Positions 32,245 to 40,956 of a stretch of 64,000 nucleotides of DNA are shown here, one piece after another; the stretch's first letter is position 1, and each line of letters opens with the position of its first letter. The DNA is taken from positions 62,001 to 126,000 of the IMG/VR virus record IMGVR_UViG_3300042923_000474; one strand, given 5' to 3'. A program made the translations under genes and the position numbers. The notes beneath the pieces are model-generated. The model was not told the DNA's origin and searched no databases. It worked only from the letters and a program-made list of their open reading frames with translations.

Positions 32245-32718
32245 TTACTTGATCTTGGAAAGCACCATGGAGATGAATTCCTCTAGGGATTTGGCGATGA
32301 TCTGCCGTTTAGGTTTACCGGTGCGGAAAAGGATGATCTGACCCCGTCGCCCACCGGCTGCTGGCGCTTGGTCAATGCAGTAATAGTCTGCCCCATTGAT
32401 TTTGGCAAACGGAATCCACGCAGGGTTCCACCAGGTAGCTGCGACCCCAGAGTCCGGCACAGCTTTCTTGTCGTCGGTCTTGCCATCGGTGTAGGTCTCG
32501 TTGAAACCTTTCCAGAGGGTCAACACCTTCTGATGAGGCAGGAATACAATCTTGCCCCCTTCAGTCTTGATGGACATCCCGTTGGATTGTTCCAGCGCAG
32601 AGCGCAGGTCCTTGGGCATGTCGATCTTTGCTTTCTGTTCGTTCGCATCGGCCTTGGCCTTATCGAGTTCAGGTCCCTTTTTTACACCTTCCGGCAGGGA
32701 TGACAAGTTAACGGCCAT
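32245..32718 (-). CDS. SMI1/KNR4 (SUKH) family immunity-like protein
   Basis: MPKDLRSALEQSNG, WWNPAWIPFA, DYYCIDQAP..GG..GQIILF, IAKSLEEFI. Confidence 0.85.
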   Translation of the reverse strand: MAVNLSSLPEGVKKGPELDKAKADANEQKAKIDMPKDLRSALEQSNGMSIKTEGGKIVFLPHQKVLTLWKGFNETYTDGKTDDKKAVPDSGVAATWWNPAWIPFAKINGADYYCIDQAPAAGGRRGQIILFRTGKPKRQIIAKSLEEFISMVLSKIK

Positions 32719-33154
32719 TGCGAGGCTCCTGATTGATTTGCTCTATATAGTTCAACCAGTTGGTGAGGAAGTCACGAGCCTTATCGTGATTGCCCACTGT
32801 CTTACCGGTCTGACGACCCGCTACAAAAGCTGCACGAGACAGTTCACGAATGCCATGGTAGGCTTGCTCTTTACGACGCAGGCTTTCCCAGTCCAGACGT
32901 TTGTCGATGCCGTGCAGATGGGAACGGATGTGGAAGGTGATCATGTTTGCACGGTGGCCACCAATGGGTTCCGGCAACTCTACAGCTTCCAGCTTTTCCA
33001 ACTCCTGACCCGCCACGTGATCGGCGTAGATCTCCTTGTGCATCTGTTCATGCATGTCCATGCCGCGTTGCTCTTCTGGAGTCAGCGGCTTCTGAAGATC
33101 TGACTGATAAGTGAAATCAGACATCAGACCTGCATTGAAGGGTGACGATCGCAT
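32708..33154 (-). CDS. Hypothetical protein with an isolated terminase-type Walker A peptide (GRQTGKT)
   Basis: GGAG RBS; AFVAGRQTGKT encoded at 32798-32818. Confidence 0.7.
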   Translation of the reverse strand: MRSSPFNAGLMSDFTYQSDLQKPLTPEEQRGMDMHEQMHKEIYADHVAGQELEKLEAVELPEPIGGHRANMITFHIRSHLHGIDKRLDWESLRRKEQAYHGIRELSRAAFVAGRQTGKTVGNHDKARDFLTNWLNYIEQINQEPRNGR

Positions 33155-33363
33155 ATGAAACTCCGTAGTCTTTCAGGGAACCCTCGCATGCTCACGTACT
33201 GATTCCGAGCGTGCTGCTGGCCACACAGATAAATAAAGTCACGACGCTGTTGGGCATCGAAAGTGATTGCACCCAACTGCATGCAGTAGGGCAGGGGCTT
33301 AAGAATCCCGCCCACTCGGTTCGCCATCATCTCCAGCATCGGAGTCGGTAACGTCAGGTTCAT
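33124..33363 (-). CDS. Possible hypothetical protein (79 aa)
   Basis: Fills the gap in the operon but overlaps both neighbours. Confidence 0.4.
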   Translation of the reverse strand: MNLTLPTPMLEMMANRVGGILKPLPYCMQLGAITFDAQQRRDFIYLCGQQHARNQYVSMRGFPERLRSFICDRHPSMQV

Positions 33364-33913
33364 TGAGCGACTCCATTAGCATGCGATCGATGGGGTCCAT
33401 GGGACCGTACTCGGTAGGGGGCACCATCAGGAAATCAATGTCACTTGACGGCGTGGGTTCGGAATGATCAACAGTGCCCGTAGGGACTATCCGGCCCAAG
33501 TAAGGGACACCATCCTTACTGACATCAATACGGGAGACGGGGTCTGGCATGAAATCGCAATTGCCAATGCTCAATGAGTCAATGGACAATGGATGAGGAT
33601 ACTCGGTCACCATCTGACGAATGCCACCGTCCTCTACGGCCGTCGGGCGAGTGGCGAAGAACTGCCGTTCGAATTCCCGCTCCCGATGACGCAACTTGAT
33701 CCATTCCAACTGGGCCCTGAAGTTGATGTCTTTCTCAAAGCCAGACACATGACTCGTGACACAAAAGCTCAGCGCCTTGATGTACGAGGGAGGCTGGCTA
33801 AGGGCGTAGCGAGGAACGCCCTCTTCAACCAGACTGGTGGCCAAAGCGTCCAGCTGTTCCTGTTCACGTTTCCTGTCTGCTTGACGCTGGAGGCGCTTTC
33901 TACGGTTGGCCAT
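33299..33913 (-). CDS. Hypothetical protein, basic N-terminus and acidic C-terminus
   Basis: AAGG RBS; 204 aa. Confidence 0.65.
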   Translation of the reverse strand: MANRRKRLQRQADRKREQEQLDALATSLVEEGVPRYALSQPPSYIKALSFCVTSHVSGFEKDINFRAQLEWIKLRHREREFERQFFATRPTAVEDGGIRQMVTEYPHPLSIDSLSIGNCDFMPDPVSRIDVSKDGVPYLGRIVPTGTVDHSEPTPSSDIDFLMVPPTEYGPMDPIDRMLMESLNEPDVTDSDAGDDGEPSGRDS

Positions 33914-33926
33914 TTTCTTACCTTGA

Positions 33927-34625
33927 TTAACGTGGTTGCCTGAAAGATTGCTTGGATCTGTGGCGTATTACTGAGCCCCGCATCTTCTTGGTACGGTTCT
34001 GCCGCTTACGGTTGCGCAGGATGTCCAGCGTGACCATTTGCAACAGTACATCACAGATGAGGTTGTGTGCAGCATCCGCGCGCTCTGGAGACATCCCTAC
34101 GACGTACTGTTGCATGGTGTCTGCATCCATCACAATGTCGCCCGGCAGTGGACCATCAGGACGACCCAACGCATCACCACCGTGCCACATCGGAGGAACC
34201 TTGACGTTGCGCAGGGGTTCTGGGATGTCGACAACGACGGGGCCAAAGGCATTTAAGAAGGTGGGTTCAAAGTCCGGCGTAGATTTTCTTTCACCACGCA
34301 ACATTGTTTGAACACTGGGTTGCAGGTGACTGTCGCACAGGCCGAAGCTTAAAACGTCTTCGCCTTTACCTAGGCCATTGACCAAACCGACCTCGGAGAT
34401 AACTGCGTAGGCTTGACCTTTGTGCTGGGTCATGTTCACCTCGTAGACCTTACCGTTAGACAACTCCAACGGTGCCTGGATGATGTCTAACAGCTCCTTT
34501 GGGAACTCGTAGAGGTGCCGGGCAATACCTGTCTTCTCCTCGACAGGTTCAGCAACCTTCGGAGCGTCACCTATCCGGGTGATCTCCATGGCGGTTATGT
34601 CGCACAGCTTATTGCCTTTTTCCAT
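33927..34625 (-). CDS. Hypothetical protein with an Arg/Lys-rich C-terminus
   Basis: Start moved to ATG 34625; overlap-coupled. Confidence 0.65.
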   Translation of the reverse strand: MEKGNKLCDITAMEITRIGDAPKVAEPVEEKTGIARHLYEFPKELLDIIQAPLELSNGKVYEVNMTQHKGQAYAVISEVGLVNGLGKGEDVLSFGLCDSHLQPSVQTMLRGERKSTPDFEPTFLNAFGPVVVDIPEPLRNVKVPPMWHGGDALGRPDGPLPGDIVMDADTMQQYVVGMSPERADAAHNLICDVLLQMVTLDILRNRKRQNRTKKMRGSVIRHRSKQSFRQPR

Positions 34626-35220
34626 GATTGATATCTCGAATGGCTTGTTGTAAAGGTGGGAGGATCTCTTGTTGAGGTCCCATGTAATCGCAATGGCCGA
34701 TAGTTCCCACATTGACAATGGGTTTCTTCAGCCCGGCCAGAGGATCTTCGTACATACCACCCCACGCCTTGTACGAGACGGTGTAGCGATCACGCCATGG
34801 CTCGATAGCGATCACGTTGGCAGCGATCATGTAGCGAGTCATGGCCTCTGCATCACGCAGGTGCACGATGTGGTCATGGAGAGGATCTGCCAGCGGCCCA
34901 CCGAACATGGGTTCCATGCTGCACTTGGTGTGCCCGGTGTAATACAAGATGCGCTCATTGGGATCACGCTCGTCTACGACCCGCCTGGTCCTTAGGTCGT
35001 AACCACGCGCACGATAAACCGAGTGACGGTGTGCATTGGGTTCAACGACCGATTGGAGTGGAGAGTTCTCCAACATCTCCACATGGGCTGCATGGATTTT
35101 GGATTGGTAGAATTCATTGCGGGCTTTATGCCACTCGTCCATGGCTTGCTCGTGGGCCAATTCCCCTTTCTCAAAGAGGCGATGCCAGCTGCTCTTCTTG
35201 AAGCTTACAAAGGTATCCAT
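34609..35220 (-). CDS. Hypothetical protein with an EF-Tu-like peptide KPIVNVGTIGHCD
   Basis: 203 aa; motif encoded at 34687-34725. Confidence 0.7.
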   Translation of the reverse strand: MDTFVSFKKSSWHRLFEKGELAHEQAMDEWHKARNEFYQSKIHAAHVEMLENSPLQSVVEPNAHRHSVYRARGYDLRTRRVVDERDPNERILYYTGHTKCSMEPMFGGPLADPLHDHIVHLRDAEAMTRYMIAANVIAIEPWRDRYTVSYKAWGGMYEDPLAGLKKPIVNVGTIGHCDYMGPQQEILPPLQQAIRDINHGKRQ

Positions 35221-36353
35221 TGATCTTCTACCCGATAAGAGAAGGAAGGTTCGCCAGCTCTAACCTTAACCTGCACGCGGTTTGGGCCGACAGCCTTAAT
35301 GACCTCACGATCAAAGAGGCATTCCAATTGACCCTCAGTTACGAGGGGGTGATTGCCATGTTCCTTAACCACCTCATTCCATGCAGTGATCGCTGCAAAC
35401 TTCAGCTCTTCGGTACTCATAGGCGCCTTGACCGACGGCATGATTATCGAGGAACCTGTGTCGATGCGACGGAAGTGGTGACCTTCACGAGGCCTGATGC
35501 CCGGCAGGCTGTATACCCACTCGCCATCGCCAGCCTTGAACTTGAAGCTGACCTTGTCGTACTTCTCATCCTTCCAGATGGCCTCAGCGGAAACCATCTC
35601 TGGTCCAACTTCACGCCAGAAGTCTTGGAACTTGGTTGCCACGACGGTGTGAGGTGGGCTTTGGTGATGGGCGAAGTACACCATGGTGAAGCTCCACGCT
35701 TTCTGAGCCAGTTCTTCATACGTGGCCAATGAGCTGGGTGTGGGATATCGTGAGGAAGGCTCTACCGTGACCGTAGGGAAGTAGATCTCAGCGAACTGTG
35801 CCGGCTTCCCGCCCAGATATTCATCCAGCGAGATCGGACGCTCAATCTCTTTCCACTCACCCCAGACCAGTTGCTCGTAACGCACACCCATGCCGACGAA
35901 ACGAACACGAGCCAGCTCGGAGCCAAACTTCTCACGAGCAGCCCGTGCAAATTCAGCCTGCATGTGCTCGCCGTAGCGGTCGCGGTTAGCGGAGTAAATG
36001 CGGCTCCATGTTTCATCGCACCATTCCCACGTTGGGCCGTCTACCATCTCTTCCCTGTAGTAGTCGCCGATGGAGAGGGCCGGTGGGAACAGAGGAGGGG
36101 TGCCGATCGCCTTTTTCTCAATCTCTGACCACGTCAGCATGTCGCCGTCCATATCGCCCGGTGTCTTGTCAGGATACTGAGGCAGTGTACGGATGGCATC
36201 CCATGCGTAACGTTCAGCTTTCGCGCCGAGGATACGTGTGAAGAAGTATTCTGGATTAACCCTGACTTCTTCCAGAATGAGTTCCTTCTGCTCCTGAGTC
36301 AGGTTCGGCGAGAAAGGGTCAAGCGCCTTTACGTTCTTGTTAATCAGTTCCAT
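35205..36353 (-). CDS. Hypothetical protein with a terminase-N-like first 40 aa
   Basis: ALDPFSPNLTQEQKELILEEVRVNPEYFFTRIL; start moved to ATG 36353. Confidence 0.7.
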   Translation of the reverse strand: MELINKNVKALDPFSPNLTQEQKELILEEVRVNPEYFFTRILGAKAERYAWDAIRTLPQYPDKTPGDMDGDMLTWSEIEKKAIGTPPLFPPALSIGDYYREEMVDGPTWEWCDETWSRIYSANRDRYGEHMQAEFARAAREKFGSELARVRFVGMGVRYEQLVWGEWKEIERPISLDEYLGGKPAQFAEIYFPTVTVEPSSRYPTPSSLATYEELAQKAWSFTMVYFAHHQSPPHTVVATKFQDFWREVGPEMVSAEAIWKDEKYDKVSFKFKAGDGEWVYSLPGIRPREGHHFRRIDTGSSIIMPSVKAPMSTEELKFAAITAWNEVVKEHGNHPLVTEGQLECLFDREVIKAVGPNRVQVKVRAGEPSFSYRVEDQWIPL

Positions 36354-36729
36354 GCTGTTCCCCCACAGTTGTAATGTCAGTAAGTTGGTAAGCTTCTTTC
36401 CCGTCGACGCAGACCGAGATAGCATTGAACGGTTCGCCCACAGGGATCGCAGTGATGCGCCCATGGATCTCCACCGGCAGCTTAACGGAGTTAGCCTTCT
36501 CCACAATTGCTCGGGCCAGTGTGACGTGAATGTCTTCGCCTTCCAGTTGGACATTGGTTTCATCGTCCAATGCCAAGTCAACTACCTGACAGGCAATCCA
36601 CAAGCGTTGACTGGTCGCCAAGGCCTCTGGGTTGCTGTCGTACATGGTGGACAGAGTCGGGTACTGCATTGCGCGCAGCATCTCGGTGGCTTGATCTGCT
36701 TCAACCTGAGGGATGAATTGCTTTACCAT
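36340..36729 (-). CDS. Hypothetical protein (129 aa)
   Basis: GGAG RBS. Confidence 0.7.
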   Translation of the reverse strand: MVKQFIPQVEADQATEMLRAMQYPTLSTMYDSNPEALATSQRLWIACQVVDLALDDETNVQLEGEDIHVTLARAIVEKANSVKLPVEIHGRITAIPVGEPFNAISVCVDGKEAYQLTDITTVGEQHGTD

Positions 36730-36746
36730 GATTTACTCCAAAATTA

Positions 36747-36774
36747 GCATAAAGGCCCACCCCGAAGGATGGGC
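36747..36774 (-). terminator. UUCG hairpin followed by CTTTATGC on the minus strand
   Basis: Minus strand GCCCATCC-TTCG-GGGTGGGC-CTT-TATGC. Confidence 0.7.
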
Positions 36775-36943
36775 ACAATGGGGGCTTATGCCCGAGGCAG
36801 GCTGGTAGCCAAGGCTACCCAGAAGTCACGCCAAACTTTCTGCACGTCCAGAAGCGCTTTCGCATTTCCATACGGGCAGACGAGAGGGATAGACTGCTGT
36901 GGGATTACAACAGGAAGCTTTCGGTTCATGACGCCCCCAGACA

Positions 36944-37774
36944 TTACTTCTGCTCAGCCTGATCTTTCTTGGCCTGCTCTTCAGCAGCCAGATCTTCAGC
37001 CGACTTTTCTACAGGCGCCGGAGCGTCGGTATTTGGTTTGTCGGTATTGACCTGTTCCAGGCCGGCAGCAGAGCTGGCAGCAGGTGGAACCTGTTCAGGG
37101 TTTGGCGCAGAGGGCAGATCGTTGCTTGCAGGCACAGCGCCTTCAAGTACGGTCTTTTCTTCTGGCAGTTTCATGTCGGTTGGAGCAGAGCCAGTTTGTG
37201 CTTCAGCGGCCACTTCCGAAGTGGTCACAACCACTGCAGAGTCAGGCTGCCCTTCAACTGGTGCTGCACCCGCTTGACGACCAGCGTCAGAGATGGTCAG
37301 ACCGTTGTCAGCCGACGGAGCGACGTATTCAACGCCGTTCTGTTCGTTCAGAGAGGCATTGCCCTCGTGCAGAACATTGTCGACCACAGGGGCTTGCAGG
37401 TCTTCACCAGCGCCATTGCGGTGACTGCCCGGAGCCCAGGTGCCCACCACTTCGCTTTCGTGCAGGACGTTGGCTTTACGCTCGCCTTGGCTACCGTCAG
37501 AGACGGACACTGCCAGAAGGGCCAGACGCGGGTGGTGGTTGGTGGCCAACTGGTTGAATCGACGGACGAAGGTCGACGTTTCCAGATGTTCCTTGTTGGC
37601 CTCGGCCACACCGACAACCTCATTGATGAGGACGCCAACTTTCGACTTGATGACATCGGTCGAAGGTTCCGGGGTGTTGTCGCGTTTCGGTTCAGTTGCC
37701 TGAGCCTTCACTTGAGCGTCTGCAGCTTGGGTGCGCTGCTGCTCTTGCTGGCGACGTTGGTTCTTCTTGGACAT
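36944..37774 (-). CDS. Acidic, largely disordered hypothetical protein (276 aa)
   Basis: GGAG RBS; Ala/Glu/Pro/Gln-rich. Confidence 0.7.
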   Translation of the reverse strand: MSKKNQRRQQEQQRTQAADAQVKAQATEPKRDNTPEPSTDVIKSKVGVLINEVVGVAEANKEHLETSTFVRRFNQLATNHHPRLALLAVSVSDGSQGERKANVLHESEVVGTWAPGSHRNGAGEDLQAPVVDNVLHEGNASLNEQNGVEYVAPSADNGLTISDAGRQAGAAPVEGQPDSAVVVTTSEVAAEAQTGSAPTDMKLPEEKTVLEGAVPASNDLPSAPNPEQVPPAASSAAGLEQVNTDKPNTDAPAPVEKSAEDLAAEEQAKKDQAEQK

Positions 37775-37827
37775 GTGATTTCTCCATGTTTCAGTTGAAT
37801 GTGGAGTGGGGTCCCCACATAAGAATG

Positions 37828-38121
37828 TCAGGAGTGCAGGATTTCCAGCACGTGATCCACCAGATCCTGGCCCTCTTTCAGCTCAGGTGTCATGGGGTAC
37901 AAATTCTCAGCCTTGGTACGGTTCAGGCGGAACTGCTTGAACACAGGAGGACCCTCGCCGTACCACTGACCTTTATCGGCTACCATGACCGAGTAGCGTC
38001 CTTGCTTGGCGCCGAGGTGATGTACACGCTTATCACCGATCATGACTTTGTTGGCGTTGAAGAAGCAAAGACGCAGGTGGTCTGTGGGTACCGAAGTACC
38101 CATCACGTTAAGCCCACTCAT
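37828..38121 (-). CDS. Hypothetical protein (97 aa)
   Basis: Start moved to ATG 38121, TAATG overlap with the upstream stop. Confidence 0.6.
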   Translation of the reverse strand: MSGLNVMGTSVPTDHLRLCFFNANKVMIGDKRVHHLGAKQGRYSVMVADKGQWYGEGPPVFKQFRLNRTKAENLYPMTPELKEGQDLVDHVLEILHS

Positions 38122-38411
38122 TACGAAATCTCGACGTCGGCCAGTTTCAGGAAGCGGTGGTACCAGTACGACCAGTTGTGACGGCATTCCAGACGAATGG
38201 CTTCACGCTGCTCTTCGGTAACATCCGGGCTGAAGGGGTCCAGCTCTTTCAGGGCAGGGTTGACGTAGTACAGGCCTTCCGGTACCTGGATGAGTTTAGA
38301 AGCAGCTGCACGCTGCTCCTGAGTCATCTCCTCGTAACGGCGAGCCAACTTGATGCTCTCATCGTTTTCGAGGAAGGTGGCGTCAAACTTAAATTCACTA
38401 TCGGTATTCAT
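38121..38411 (-). CDS. Stand-alone 96-aa protein resembling the N-terminus of phiKZ-like large terminase
   Basis: NDESIKLARRYEEM...NPALKELDPFSPDVTEEQREAIRLECRHNWSYW; TAATG-coupled to SbcC. Confidence 0.65.
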   Translation of the reverse strand: MNTDSEFKFDATFLENDESIKLARRYEEMTQEQRAAASKLIQVPEGLYYVNPALKELDPFSPDVTEEQREAIRLECRHNWSYWYHRFLKLADVEIS

Positions 38412-40891
38412 TAACTAATCTCCACATGCAGATTGGCGTCGGCTGGACGCGTGATATTTCGGTCATCCAATACCACGAACTCGGCTTGGTTAAATGAACC
38501 ATAGACCGACGAATAGTGACTGACCATGAACAACTGACTGAACCGACCCTGCTCCATCAGCGACTGAATGTAATTGACCAGACGCTCGCGGTGCTCATCG
38601 TCAAAGTCCTTACCGAACTCATCGGCCAGCAATGGGAAGTCGTGTAAACCTGTCAACTCCATCACCACCAACTTGAACACCCAGTCAATCATCGAGACCT
38701 GACCGGTAGACCCATCGGCAATATCGCCATCGGGGTTCGGTTGGTTGTTGACAATGATCGGGAGTTTCACGTTGAGGGTAGCGCCTTCCTCCAAGACCGC
38801 ATCAATCTCCATCGGGTACGTCCACACCATCGCAATGTGTTCGTTGATCATCCCAGTGAAGTGACGAATGAAGTTCTTGGTGATGTCTGCCACAATGCCA
38901 TGAGTAGGTGACAGGGCGCGAGCCAGTAACTTGTACGACGTGAAGCGAGACTCCACATCAATCAGCTCACTGCGAGAGTTCTCGTAACGGGCTTGTAGGT
39001 CACGGTAACGCTGGGTGGATTGGTGCAGGGTAGCCAGACGGGTCATCACCTTGCCACGCACCTGATCCAGATGCTCATCACGCAGTGCATCTTCCACTTG
39101 CTTACGCAGGGAGTTGAACGATTCAATGGCGTTGGACATCTCCATCATCAGAGTATCCAACTTCTCCAAGTGATAGAGTTCCTCACTGAGTTGGGCCATT
39201 GCGATCGTTGCCTGGTTCACCGCCTCGTACTTGTCGTGCAGCTCACCTTCGAGCAGGTCAGCACGCTGCAGCAGGAACTTAGGATCACCACTGTTCTTGA
39301 TCAGCTCCAGACGCGATGTGAGGTCCTTTAGCTCTGCAGTGATACGCTTGGCGTAAGCAGTGTCCAAAAGCTTTCTAATCGTGTCTGAGAGCGCCACAGA
39401 GATCATGGCAGGGTTAGTGCGTACATAACCTCGTTCACTCACCATCTCCCAGAAAGCAGACAACACTTTGGAGCCTTCACGAATACGAGCCAACTCACCG
39501 AGCTTACGGCTGTAGTCATCAAAGTCTGAGATGTGGACAGACAACTCCTCCATCTCCCGCTGAGCCTGCTCCACCTTTTGACGACGACTGTCCAACCGCG
39601 CCTGAGTTTGCTCAACCAACCCAGCAGGCCAGCCCGGCTTGAAGGTGTGTTCACACTTAGGGCAGTTGGTATCAGCGGTGTGGGTCGCATGTTCCAGCGT
39701 CGCCTCCATCTTGGAGATGACGTTGTTGGATTCAATGCACCACTGACTGAGTTTGGTGTAGCGCTCCATCCTTTCAGAGTGAGTACCACGAGCGTACAGT
39801 CCTTCGGTGTTGGCAGGGATCGTGACGCACAGTTCAGTCAGTTGCTGCTGGATACCTTCCGCTACGGCCAGCAACGCTTCAGGAGACTCGCTACCGCATT
39901 CGTAGAGACTGCCTTGAGCTTGGATACCCGCCAGCTCTTCTTCGATCTGTGCAACGCGTGTAGTGAGCTGAGAAGGATCGTCCAAAGACTCACGACCTAC
40001 GTGACGGATCAGCGACTGGATACCTTCCAGTGCTTTCTCATGGGTGTCACACTCCCCACGGGTCTTCATCATCCGATCACGCAGCGAGGAGATCTCGCCA
40101 TCCACCTGCTCTTTGGTCTTGCCACCGTACTTGGAGTTGTCACGAATGACCGTCTCCGCCACGATGGTTTGAGAGCGCTGGTGAATGGTCTTGTACGCGT
40201 CCTGCATGCGCTTGATCAGACCACTGGAATCGGCTACCGACATTCGGCCATTCAAAGCGTGGTTGAGTTCAATGCCCAACTGCTTGAGTTGAGTGACCTC
40301 ATCATCCGTGTCCTTGAAGTCATCCTCCATAGAACGGATCTCATCGGACATGTCATGTGTCAGGTCCAGCAGGTACTTCATCGTACCCTGCATGTCACGG
40401 GCTTTGACACGAAACTGTTCGAACAGACCCAACACGTAATCAAAGTCAGTCCCTGAGATACGCATCATCCACTCACGGCGTTTGGAGGGACTCATCTGAG
40501 ACAGGCGTGCTCGTCCTGTCAGAATGTCACTCACCTCTTGGGTCAACCCCACGTAACGCTCTACCAACTCTTTCTGAGTGGCCTGAGTGTTGCCGTCGTT
40601 CAGCTGAACACCGTTCATGTTAAAGGTGTGGTGACCGGCCTTAACGTTATAGACGCTGATCAGGTTGAAGTTTGAATCGTTGTGTTCGAAGAAGTATTCG
40701 ACACCACCACCTTTGTGGAAACGGCTACCGTTAGGCACAAGGTTCAGAATCGCTTGTAGCAAAGAACTTTTACCTGCCCCGTTACTGCCCAGCACAATTT
40801 GTTCCTGTGACTGCGGCGTATATTCGAAGCGCCAAATACCCGCTAGGTCAAAAGACTTGTAGCCGGTTAGGATGATTTTGAGAAGACGCAT
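38411..40891 (-). CDS. sbcC: SbcC/Rad50-like SMC ATPase
   Basis: Walker A GSNGAGKS, coiled coils, central CPKC zinc hook, signature GSTGQ, Walker B LLADE, H-loop MVSH. Confidence 0.92.
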   Translation of the reverse strand: MRLLKIILTGYKSFDLAGIWRFEYTPQSQEQIVLGSNGAGKSSLLQAILNLVPNGSRFHKGGGVEYFFEHNDSNFNLISVYNVKAGHHTFNMNGVQLNDGNTQATQKELVERYVGLTQEVSDILTGRARLSQMSPSKRREWMMRISGTDFDYVLGLFEQFRVKARDMQGTMKYLLDLTHDMSDEIRSMEDDFKDTDDEVTQLKQLGIELNHALNGRMSVADSSGLIKRMQDAYKTIHQRSQTIVAETVIRDNSKYGGKTKEQVDGEISSLRDRMMKTRGECDTHEKALEGIQSLIRHVGRESLDDPSQLTTRVAQIEEELAGIQAQGSLYECGSESPEALLAVAEGIQQQLTELCVTIPANTEGLYARGTHSERMERYTKLSQWCIESNNVISKMEATLEHATHTADTNCPKCEHTFKPGWPAGLVEQTQARLDSRRQKVEQAQREMEELSVHISDFDDYSRKLGELARIREGSKVLSAFWEMVSERGYVRTNPAMISVALSDTIRKLLDTAYAKRITAELKDLTSRLELIKNSGDPKFLLQRADLLEGELHDKYEAVNQATIAMAQLSEELYHLEKLDTLMMEMSNAIESFNSLRKQVEDALRDEHLDQVRGKVMTRLATLHQSTQRYRDLQARYENSRSELIDVESRFTSYKLLARALSPTHGIVADITKNFIRHFTGMINEHIAMVWTYPMEIDAVLEEGATLNVKLPIIVNNQPNPDGDIADGSTGQVSMIDWVFKLVVMELTGLHDFPLLADEFGKDFDDEHRERLVNYIQSLMEQGRFSQLFMVSHYSSVYGSFNQAEFVVLDDRNITRPADANLHVEIS

Positions 40892-40956
40892 GGGTAGGCT
40901 TTCCGTATTCGTAGGCATTCGCTAATAAGTGCCCCCAATCTGTTAGGAGATACACG

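What the first reader, a model, noticed from the sequence alone, without database searches (positions are those of the whole stretch)
38121..38411. Stand-alone mini-protein resembling the large terminase N-terminus, translationally coupled to SbcC
Seen: a 96-aa ORF with TAATG overlaps to SbcC upstream and the next ORF. It contains NDESIKLARRYEEM and NPALKELDPFSPDVTEEQREAIRLECRHNWSYW. As recalled, phiKZ-like terminases begin N.SF..LA..Y..MG...L.PEL.GVDP..PNL......I..EC..NPWYF. No ATPase follows. Inference: a decoy, a dominant-negative packaging regulator, or an adaptor linking SbcC processing to packaging.
Basis: partly seen in the sequence, partly recalled or inferred. Interest (0 to 1): 0.7.

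Follow-up and report, generated by a model that had tools for sequence, protein, structure and literature searches.

The report
Stand-alone copy of terminase N-terminal subdomain
A jumbo phage carries a small, intact gene under purifying selection that encodes only the first helical piece of its DNA-packaging enzyme, present in some strains and missing in others, which suggests an unknown accessory that tunes or sabotages DNA packaging.

Summary
ORF96 (window 38121-38411, minus strand) is an intact 96-aa gene. It shares TAATG overlaps with the SbcC-like gene upstream and with the next gene.

Residues 15-93 are homologous to the pre-ATPase N-terminal subdomain of chimallivirus-type large terminases (TerL). 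A TerL-only profile gives E 2e-9, and the next non-family ORF in the genome scores 0.48. No ATPase or nuclease follows. The genuine TerL lies about 54 kb away, outside the window.

It is not a relic:
- The locus is present without indels in at least four of six independent runs, and a seventh carries a divergent allele.
- 8 of 9 variable sites are synonymous (P about 3e-5).
- An allele 84% identical in DNA keeps every invariant family position in its readable part.

It is also dispensable. Near-identical relatives carry a 23-aa micro-ORF, or nothing, at the same junction. The link to SbcC is therefore positional only.

The same subdomain recurs in other accessory proteins: a 382-aa paralogue in this window, Pseudomonas phage Noxifer gp119, and a 171-aa metagenomic protein.

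The function is inferred, not shown. My best guess is a mimic that competes for whatever docks on the TerL N-terminus, and so modulates or interferes with packaging. An Avs decoy role is unlikely.

The parts
38121..38411 (-). ORF96 (P0001): 96 aa, 11.5 kDa, pI 4.8. A stand-alone homologue of the TerL pre-ATPase N-terminal subdomain.
38133..38273 (-). Core motif, aa 47-93 (NPALKELDPFSP..TEEQ..I..EC..N..Y...R). It corresponds to TerL residues about 44-90. The last two helices match the universal N-terminal helices of TerL ATPase domains.
38131..38406 (-). The 276-nt strain-specific segment. A 95-97% identical relative (L012) and run X8 have 68 nt here instead, encoding a 23-aa Cys-rich micro-ORF. 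The start codon and the last 10 nt before the next ATG are shared flanks.
38420..38423 (-). GGAG Shine-Dalgarno-like element, 8 nt upstream of the ORF96 ATG and inside the SbcC coding end.
   Evidence: sequence
38411..40918 (-). SbcC-like SMC/Rad50-type ATPase (835 aa). First gene of the leftward unit, divergent from a baseplate gene as in RP12, Goslar and Noxifer.
37828..38121 (-). Next gene (P0002, 97 aa counted from the ATG at 38121). ORFan, conserved in L008 and L012, where it directly follows SbcC or the micro-ORF.
36944..37774 (-). 276-aa acidic, low-complexity protein. Last gene before a terminator-like hairpin.
36755..36774 (-). Terminator-like GC hairpin followed by a T-rich tail. Likely end of the SbcC-ORF96-P0002-276aa unit (a consensus match only).
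35205..36353 (-). P0005 (382 aa): a second protein with the TerL-N motif, at its N-terminus (aa 4-48), fused to an unknown C-terminal region. Conserved in L008 and L009. In L012 its first ~250 codons, including the motif, are replaced by 201 nt.

Best explanation
SHOWN. ORF96 is a real protein-coding accessory gene under purifying selection, in a nucleus-forming (chimallin-encoding) jumbo phage. It encodes only the helical N-terminal subdomain that in TerL precedes, and packs on, the ATPase core. It sits in a hot spot right after the SbcC-like gene and is present in some strains and absent in others. It is one of several independent accessory proteins that have captured this subdomain.

INFERRED. 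It acts as a molecular mimic of the TerL N-terminus. It would be expressed with the replication and recombination genes. It would occupy the partner that normally docks on the TerL N-terminus: a TerS-like initiation factor, or the neighbouring-subunit or portal contact of the motor. That would delay or dampen packaging by the phage's own TerL, or poison packaging by a co-infecting rival chimallivirus.

Confidence. Identity and selection: about 0.9. The mimic-and-titration mechanism: about 0.35.
For: Homology:
- establish homology to the TerL N-terminus.
- Nearly all family-invariant positions are kept: N16, M29, L40, L54, D58, P59, I72, E75, C76, N79, Y82, R85.
- The AF2 model has five helices that match the helix order of the TerL N-terminus.
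- Its nearest shapes in the ESM Atlas are a 166-aa viral hypothetical cluster and TerL clusters. Its top BFVD hit is Noxifer gp119.

A real gene under selection:
- The locus is covered without gaps in runs X1, X2, X3 and X6, each from a different study, and largely (X4) or partly (X9) covered in two more.
- 8 of 9 variable sites are synonymous third positions, P(>=8 of 9) = 2.7e-5. The flanking SbcC (25 of 25) and P0002 (4 of 4) behave the same way.
- A divergent allele in run X11 (59 differences in 373 nt, no gaps) keeps all invariant positions in the part that could be read.
- GC and GC3 equal those of the neighbours.

Accessory and polymorphic: L012 and X8 have the micro-ORF; L008 and X11 have a clean 290-nt absence between TAATGA repeats.

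Recurrent capture of the subdomain:
- P0005 family.
- Noxifer gp119, next to a DnaB-like helicase.
- P0008, next to a dCTP deaminase.

General knowledge: TerS binds the N-terminus of TerL (review PMC13595956).

Weak hint: ORF96 resembles its own clade's TerL less than 88% of foreign TerLs do (25-28 bits against a median of 36). This fits a target other than, or orthogonal to, its own TerL.

The genome encodes a chimallin homologue.
Against: - No partner is known, and no TerS has been identified in this phage group.
- The AF2 model of TerL 1-345 places the N-subdomain as a rigid, confidently packed part of the ATPase domain (pLDDT 93-98, pTM 0.91). The conserved residues may therefore serve folding or core packing rather than an external interface.
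- A free copy would compete poorly with an intramolecular domain.
- Dispensability shows it is not needed for packaging.
- Nothing here measures expression or binding.
Confidence: 0.4

Rival explanations
1. Address tag or adaptor. The TerL N-subdomain is a portable docking module, and proteins that carry it are taken to the place or partner where TerL goes (packaging site, shell, capsid). ORF96 would be the minimal, cargo-less version, or would pair with another protein.
For: The subdomain is found fused to three unrelated extensions: C-terminal in the P0005 family and Noxifer gp119, N-terminal in P0008. This is typical of a targeting or interaction module.
Against: ORF96 has almost nothing besides the subdomain (15 N-terminal residues and a 9-residue loop insertion), so it has no cargo. 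The neighbouring P0002 exists without ORF96 in L008 and L012, so it does not depend on it.
Confidence: 0.2
2. The subdomain has been exapted as a small helical scaffold for a job unrelated to packaging, for example acting on replication or recombination proteins. The resemblance to TerL would then be only ancestry.
For: All the copies sit among DNA-metabolism genes (SbcC-like, DnaB-like helicase, dCTP deaminase) and not in the late structural modules. The small proteins lie on very long branches compared with TerLs.
Against: The positions kept are exactly the TerL-invariant ones, in four independent architectures and in a divergent allele. The SbcC adjacency is not conserved in relatives.
Confidence: 0.2
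3. Immune decoy. ORF96 soaks up a host sensor that recognises TerL (Avs1-3, Upx or an unknown sensor).
For: Presence/absence polymorphism and several alleles at one hot spot are typical of arms-race loci.
Against: Characterised TerL sensors bind the ATPase core, its ATP or the nuclease, and the ATPase domain is what triggers them (PMC13601566). ORF96 ends where the ATPase core begins. There are no PADLOC or anti-defence family hits.
Confidence: 0.1
4. Non-functional remnant of an illegitimate recombination that copied the 5' end of a terminase gene into the SbcC junction.
For: It is an insertion that is absent from close relatives. It has no orthologue among 5.8 billion clustered proteins or in the exhaustive search.
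Against: The frame is intact in every run examined. 8 of 9 substitutions are synonymous. A divergent allele has no indels and keeps the invariant residues. The domain boundaries are exact. Composition is fully ameliorated, and there is no DNA-level similarity to TerL or to anything else in the genome.
Confidence: 0.05

Closest known systems
Large terminase (TerL) of chimalliviruses / phiKZ-like jumbo phages (PHROG phrog_2; structural relatives T4 gp17, PDB 2O0H and 3CPE)
   Same: ORF96 residues 15-93 align with TerL residues about 21-90. The invariant positions and the helix order are shared. The last two helices correspond to the universal N-terminal helices of TerL ATPase domains.
   Different: No Walker A/B ATPase core, no nuclease, 96 aa instead of about 730 aa. 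It is much more diverged than any TerL from another, and it is dispensable.
Pseudomonas phage Noxifer gp119 (YP_009609034.1, 157 aa, annotated hypothetical)
   Same: A second, non-TerL copy of the same motif in a cultured chimallivirus (E 3e-15 to the family profile). It is tightly coupled to the DNA-metabolism gene upstream (a DnaB-like helicase) and is an ORFan outside the motif.
   Different: The motif is at the N-terminus and is followed by about 100 unrelated residues. It lacks the region upstream of the motif that ORF96 shares with TerL. It sits at a different locus.
P0005 family (this window 35205-36353; L008:13926-14885; L009:13306-14241) and P0008 (171 aa, metagenomic contig L006)
   Same: They carry the same subdomain (E 1e-8 to 1e-11 to a TerL-only profile) and are accessory genes in variable regions.
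   Different: The subdomain is fused to other, unknown domains. The P0005 family is conserved across relatives, whereas ORF96 is strain-specific.
T4 vs.8, a stand-alone protein homologous to the TerL ATPase domain (described in PMC13601566)
   Same: It is a precedent for a phage that encodes a separate, TerL-derived accessory protein besides its real terminase.
   Different: vs.8 keeps the Walker A/B ATPase core. ORF96 is only the piece in front of that core.
Satellite or phage proteins that hijack packaging by binding terminase subunits (for example PICI Ppi and Rpp proteins acting on TerS; from my own knowledge, not looked up here)
   Same: The proposed logic is the same: a small protein interferes with, or redirects, assembly of the terminase holoenzyme.
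   Different: Those proteins are not TerL fragments and they act on TerS of helper phages. No binding has been shown for ORF96.

Membership tests
Large terminase (TerL) | ASCE ATPase core with Walker A (GKS/T) and Walker B | tested here: not met
   ORF96 ends where the TerL core begins. The full-length TerL HMM matches only positions 45-82. There is no Pfam Terminase hit and no GK[ST] in the sequence.
Large terminase (TerL) | C-terminal RNase H-like nuclease domain | tested here: not met
   The 96 aa are all accounted for by the N-subdomain. The downstream ORFs have no terminase hits.
TerL N-terminal (pre-ATPase) subdomain of chimallivirus-type terminases (no curated family exists) | Significant match to a profile of TerL N-termini built without the small proteins | tested here: met
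   E 2.2e-9, 34.6 bits. The next unrelated ORF in the genome scores 0.48, and the best of 2,000 shuffles scores 10.5 bits.
TerL N-terminal (pre-ATPase) subdomain of chimallivirus-type terminases (no curated family exists) | The invariant and near-invariant positions are conserved and the helix order is the same | tested here: met
   P59, E75, N79 and Y82 are invariant. N16, M29, L40, L54, D58, I72, C76 and R85 are kept. Helices 17-28, 31-40, 52-55, 66-78 and 80-87 correspond to TerL helices 23-34, about 42-50, 63-75 and 77-84.
Small terminase (TerS) | Match to TerS families, or an HTH plus oligomerisation architecture | tested here: not met
   No TerS family hit in Pfam, PHROGs or NCBIfam.
Decoy of TerL-sensing immune receptors (Avs1-3, Upx) | Contains the epitope those sensors bind (ATPase core with ATP, or the nuclease active site) | tested here: not met
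   Neither is present in ORF96. What the sensors need is taken from PMC13601566.
Decoy of TerL-sensing immune receptors (Avs1-3, Upx) | Binds the sensor and blocks its activation | not testable with these tools
   This needs co-expression or plaque assays.
Pseudogene / relic | Disrupted frame, or no constraint on the frame | tested here: not met
   No indels in any of the runs that hold it. 8 of 9 changes are synonymous, P 2.7e-5. The divergent allele is in frame.
Dominant-negative or titrating 'microprotein' regulator | Binds the partner or oligomer interface of the parent protein | tested here: inconclusive
   Co-folding of TerL 1-345 with ORF96 gave no verdict. The partner is unknown.

The most novel reading that the evidence does not exclude
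Chimalliviruses repeatedly capture the N-terminal docking subdomain of TerL into small early or middle genes. These would act as packaging-interference weapons or checkpoints: free mimics that titrate the still-unidentified TerS-like or portal-side partner of TerL. They would let a phage block DNA packaging by co-infecting rivals, or hold back its own packaging until replication is done. If so, ORF96 would be a handle for finding the missing packaging-initiation partner of nucleus-forming phages.
Probability: 0.15. Interest if true: 0.8.

Novelty: new variant of a known kind. Interest (0 to 1): 0.55.

Why it matters
How nucleus-forming jumbo phages start and control DNA packaging is not known. 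No small terminase has been identified for them, and no structure exists for the TerL N-terminal subdomain.

Here a free-standing copy of that subdomain is under purifying selection yet strain-variable, and unrelated copies occur in Noxifer and in metagenomic phages. This marks the subdomain as an interaction module that evolution reuses.

It also gives a small, easily expressed bait for finding what binds the TerL N-terminus. It could further reveal a new layer of packaging control or of competition between phages.

If it turns out to do nothing of the sort, it is still a clean example of how a hot spot behind a conserved gene exchanges tiny cassettes while keeping translational coupling.

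Tried and rejected
- Megablast of 6 kb around the locus against cultured phages: no match.
- Word-based search of 5.8 billion protein clusters with ORF96: only itself.
- Exhaustive HMMER search of 1.84 billion representatives: besides itself, two low-complexity false hits (P0006, P0007) and P0008.
- IMG/VR scan with ORF96: nothing.
- Profile search for small homologues: 54 hits. Except for ORF96 and P0008, essentially all are genuine TerL 5' fragments at TerL-level conservation (about 80-400 bits; P0184 scores only 35). Of those read, most are cut by frameshifts or contig ends or are split TerL genes; P0149 and P0184 were not resolved.
- Foldseek of the ORF96 model against the PDB: nothing. 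PDB sequence searches with the family profile and with TerL: nothing meaningful.
- ESM-Atlas feature searches for ORF96 and P0005: no usable hit.
- NCBIfam and PADLOC: no hits.
- Tree of the subdomain: the small proteins sit on very long, unresolved branches, so no donor can be named.
- blastn of ORF96 against its own genome: no second DNA copy, so it is not a recent internal duplication.
- Co-folding of TerL 1-345 with ORF96: no verdict. It is evidence neither for nor against binding.
- Rejected idea: that the shared C-terminal VEIS of SbcC and ORF96 marks a duplicated SbcC end. Comparison with L012 shows that the ORF96 tail reads through the conserved ribosome-binding region of the next gene (GATTTC[G/A]TAATG), so the likeness probably reflects the two similar junction signals.
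- Literature searches found nothing on the role of the chimallivirus TerL N-terminus.

Full report
WHAT IS THERE

The window is bases 62001-126000 of a 231,724-bp viral record with direct terminal repeats. The phage is a distant member of the phiKZ-like, nucleus-forming group.
- Its SbcC-like protein is under 30% identical to those of Ralstonia RP12, 201phi2-1 and Goslar.
- The divergent arrangement of baseplate gene and SbcC is shared with RP12, Goslar and Noxifer.
- The genome encodes a homologue of the Goslar nuclear shell protein (28% identity, E 1.6e-24).

The finding is a 96-codon ORF on the minus strand, 38411 to 38121.
- Its ATG shares one base with the TAA of the 835-aa SbcC-like gene (TAATG).
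- A GGAG lies 8 nt upstream of the ATG.
- Its own TAA overlaps the ATG of the next gene (P0002, 97 aa) in the same way.

IS THE RESEMBLANCE TO TerL REAL?

Yes. Five independent tests agree.
1. PHROG phrog_2 (terminase large subunit) matches residues 50-86 at E 1.6e-4.
2. tblastn against 50,697 phage records gives 115 records. All 40 listed rows have one place per record, at the N-terminus of TerL or of an unannotated TerL-sized gene.
3. I built a profile from 113 foreign TerL N-termini only. Against all 2,769 ORFs of this genome it found TerL (1.3e-44), ORF96 (2.2e-9) and a second protein, P0005 (1.3e-8). The next ORF scored 0.48, and 2,000 shuffles of ORF96 reached at most 10.5 bits against 34.6.
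4. The alignment runs from N16 to about residue 93. It keeps the invariant P59, E75, N79, Y82 and the near-invariant N16, M29, L40, L54, D58, I72, C76, R85.
5. An AlphaFold2 model (pLDDT 76) has five helices in the same order as the TerL N-terminus. Its nearest shapes in the ESM Atlas are a 166-aa viral hypothetical cluster and TerL clusters.

The real TerL (726 aa) lies at genome 154833-157010, outside the window. Nothing downstream of ORF96 resembles an ATPase.

WHAT THE SUBDOMAIN IS IN TerL

A model of TerL 1-345 is very confident (pLDDT 92.9, pTM 0.91). The first 95 residues have pLDDT 93-98, so they are packed rigidly on the ATPase core.

Structural alignment gives these equivalences:
- T4 gp17: Z 19.6, model 30-345 = gp17 43-351.
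- T7 model: model 65-345 = residues 1-261.
- P74-26 TerL: model 75-345 = residues 4-246.
- PhiV-1 TerL in its Avs3 complex: model 59-345 = residues 2-286.

So the last two helices (ORF96 66-87) are the universal N-terminal helices of TerL ATPase domains. The part before them is shared with T4-like and chimallivirus TerLs. No solved structure matches ORF96 itself or the family profile.

NOT A RELIC

Contigs from public runs of different studies hold the locus without any indel:
- X1 is the likely source.
- X2 is identical over the part it covers.
- X3 and X6 are about 98% identical.
- X4 covers most of ORF96 and X9 covers part of it.

Across X3 and X6 there are 9 variable sites in ORF96. Eight are synonymous third positions and one is K21Q. 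With 21% of possible changes synonymous, P(>=8 of 9) = 2.7e-5. SbcC (25 of 25 synonymous) and P0002 (4 of 4) behave alike.

Run X11 carries a much more divergent allele: 59 differences in 373 nt, with no gaps. In the part I could read (codons 46-86) there are 7 synonymous and 11 replacement codons, yet every family-invariant position is kept.

GC and GC3 match the neighbours. There is no DNA-level copy elsewhere in the genome.

BUT DISPENSABLE, AND NOT TIED TO SbcC

The same junction has four states in the population.
1. ORF96, in the window and in runs X1-X4, X6 and X9.
2. A 68-nt segment in place of window 38131-38406, in a metagenomic contig that is 95-97% identical in DNA (L012) and in run X8. 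It encodes a 23-aa Cys-rich micro-ORF, also coupled by TGATG. A relative with 71% identical SbcC (L009) has the same micro-ORF, which suggests this is the older state.
3. A clean absence of exactly 290 nt between the two TAATGA repeats, in a relative with 80% identical SbcC (L008) and in one contig of run X11. SbcC is then coupled directly to P0002.
4. The divergent ORF96 allele, in run X11.

The locus is therefore a small-cassette hot spot that preserves translational coupling whatever sits in it. This removes the basis for a functional SbcC-to-packaging adaptor. A terminator-like hairpin at 36774-36755 suggests the unit is SbcC, ORF96, P0002 and the 276-aa acidic protein.

THE SUBDOMAIN IS REUSED ELSEWHERE

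- P0005 (window 35205-36353, 382 aa) begins with the same motif (phmmer E 8.5e-7 to ORF96). It is conserved in L008 and L009. In L012 its first ~250 codons, motif included, are replaced by 201 nt that fuse the upstream 129-aa ORF in frame to the P0005 C-terminal part.
- The exhaustive search found P0008 (171 aa). Its motif is at the C-terminus, it is a complete gene inside a 10.6-kb contig, and a dCTP deaminase gene lies two genes downstream.
- The BFVD fold search pointed to a 157-aa uncharacterised protein of Pseudomonas phage Noxifer. Searching that record with the family profile found TerL plus gp119 (E 3.1e-15), which overlaps the end of the DnaB-like helicase gene.
- RP12, Goslar, RTH11 and Proteus phage 10 have only TerL.
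- Most other small hits in the metagenomic protein collection are broken or split TerL genes.
- A tree cannot place the small proteins, because their branches are very long. ORF96 does not fall in its own TerL clade.
- ORF96 scores lower against its own clade's TerL (25-28 bits) than against 88% of foreign TerLs (median 36). This is a weak hint only.

MECHANISM

Shown:
- the identity of the protein;
- purifying selection on it;
- its polymorphism in the population;
- its modular reuse in other proteins.

Inferred:
- What it does. In tailed phages generally the TerS C-terminus binds the TerL N-terminus (review PMC13595956). A free, acidic (pI 4.8) N-subdomain made alongside replication genes is most simply a competitor for whatever docks there. 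That would make it a packaging checkpoint, or an interference factor against co-infecting relatives.

Against this:
- The subdomain is modelled as an integral part of the ATPase domain, so its conserved residues may be structural.
- No partner is known.
- Co-folding with TerL 1-345 gave no verdict.

Rivals:
- A docking tag. This fits the fused copies well and ORF96 less so.
- Exaptation to DNA metabolism.
- An immune decoy. This is disfavoured, because Avs2, Avs3 and Upx recognise the ATPase core, ATP or the nuclease (PMC13601566).
- A neutral remnant. This is largely refuted.

COMPARISON AND NOVELTY

ORF96 is not a TerL, because it has neither ATPase nor nuclease. It is a member of an uncurated TerL N-subdomain family.

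The nearest precedents are Noxifer gp119 (unannotated) and, as a concept, T4 vs.8, a stand-alone TerL ATPase-like protein (PMC13601566). I found no description of free TerL N-subdomain proteins.

I rate it a new variant of a known kind: TerL-derived or mimic accessory proteins. Interest is moderate, and it rises if the packaging-interference reading proves true.

Noticed in passing
L012:3566-3637 and L009:12470-12538 (the site equivalent to window 38131-38406): A conserved 22-23-aa Cys-rich micro-ORF (M-[ND]-C-x2-PDCPY-x-G-x-RHPYPPFPE), translationally coupled to the SbcC stop, occupies the ORF96 site in relatives. Its conservation between relatives whose SbcC proteins are about 71% identical suggests a real micro-protein.
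   Followed up: partly
window 35604-36357, compared with L012:5382-5582: In a 95-97% identical relative, the first ~250 codons of P0005 (including its TerL-like motif) are replaced by 201 nt. This fuses the upstream 129-aa ORF (window 36340-36729) in frame to the P0005 C-terminal part, giving a 323-aa protein (P0132). Both TerL-like copies are thus missing from that strain.
   Followed up: partly
window 32245-38411, minus strand: A block of about eleven consecutive leftward genes after SbcC has no PHROG hit (those also scanned against Pfam, NCBIfam and PADLOC have none either). Its content differs between close relatives: the 129-aa ORF is found only in the window/L012 lineage, and P0002 is absent from L009. 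It is a hypervariable accessory region.
   Followed up: partly
proteins P0134, P0136, P0139, P0141, P0146, P0150, from other metagenomic contigs of up to 252 kb: Several TerL genes of other jumbo phages stop at about residue 247 of the TerL profile, although they lie on long contigs. This looks like TerL genes split at one recurrent position by an intron, intein or homing-endonuclease insertion.
   Followed up: no
window 38118-38123 and 38408-38413: The 290-nt unit that holds ORF96 is bounded by identical TAATGA hexamers. One contig in run X11 lacks exactly this unit. This fits gain or loss by recombination at the stop/start junction signals.
   Followed up: partly
Noxifer NC_041994.1:104815-105288 (L020:1195-1668, minus strand): gp119 of a cultured chimallivirus is annotated hypothetical, but it starts with the TerL N-terminal motif and overlaps the end of the DnaB-like helicase gene. 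It offers an experimentally tractable counterpart of ORF96/P0005.
   Followed up: partly
runs X3, X4/X5/X7, X11: Several runs that hold this phage locus are labelled with single (coded) organisms rather than as metagenomes. This might point to the host or to a carrier culture. The names are hidden here.
   Followed up: no
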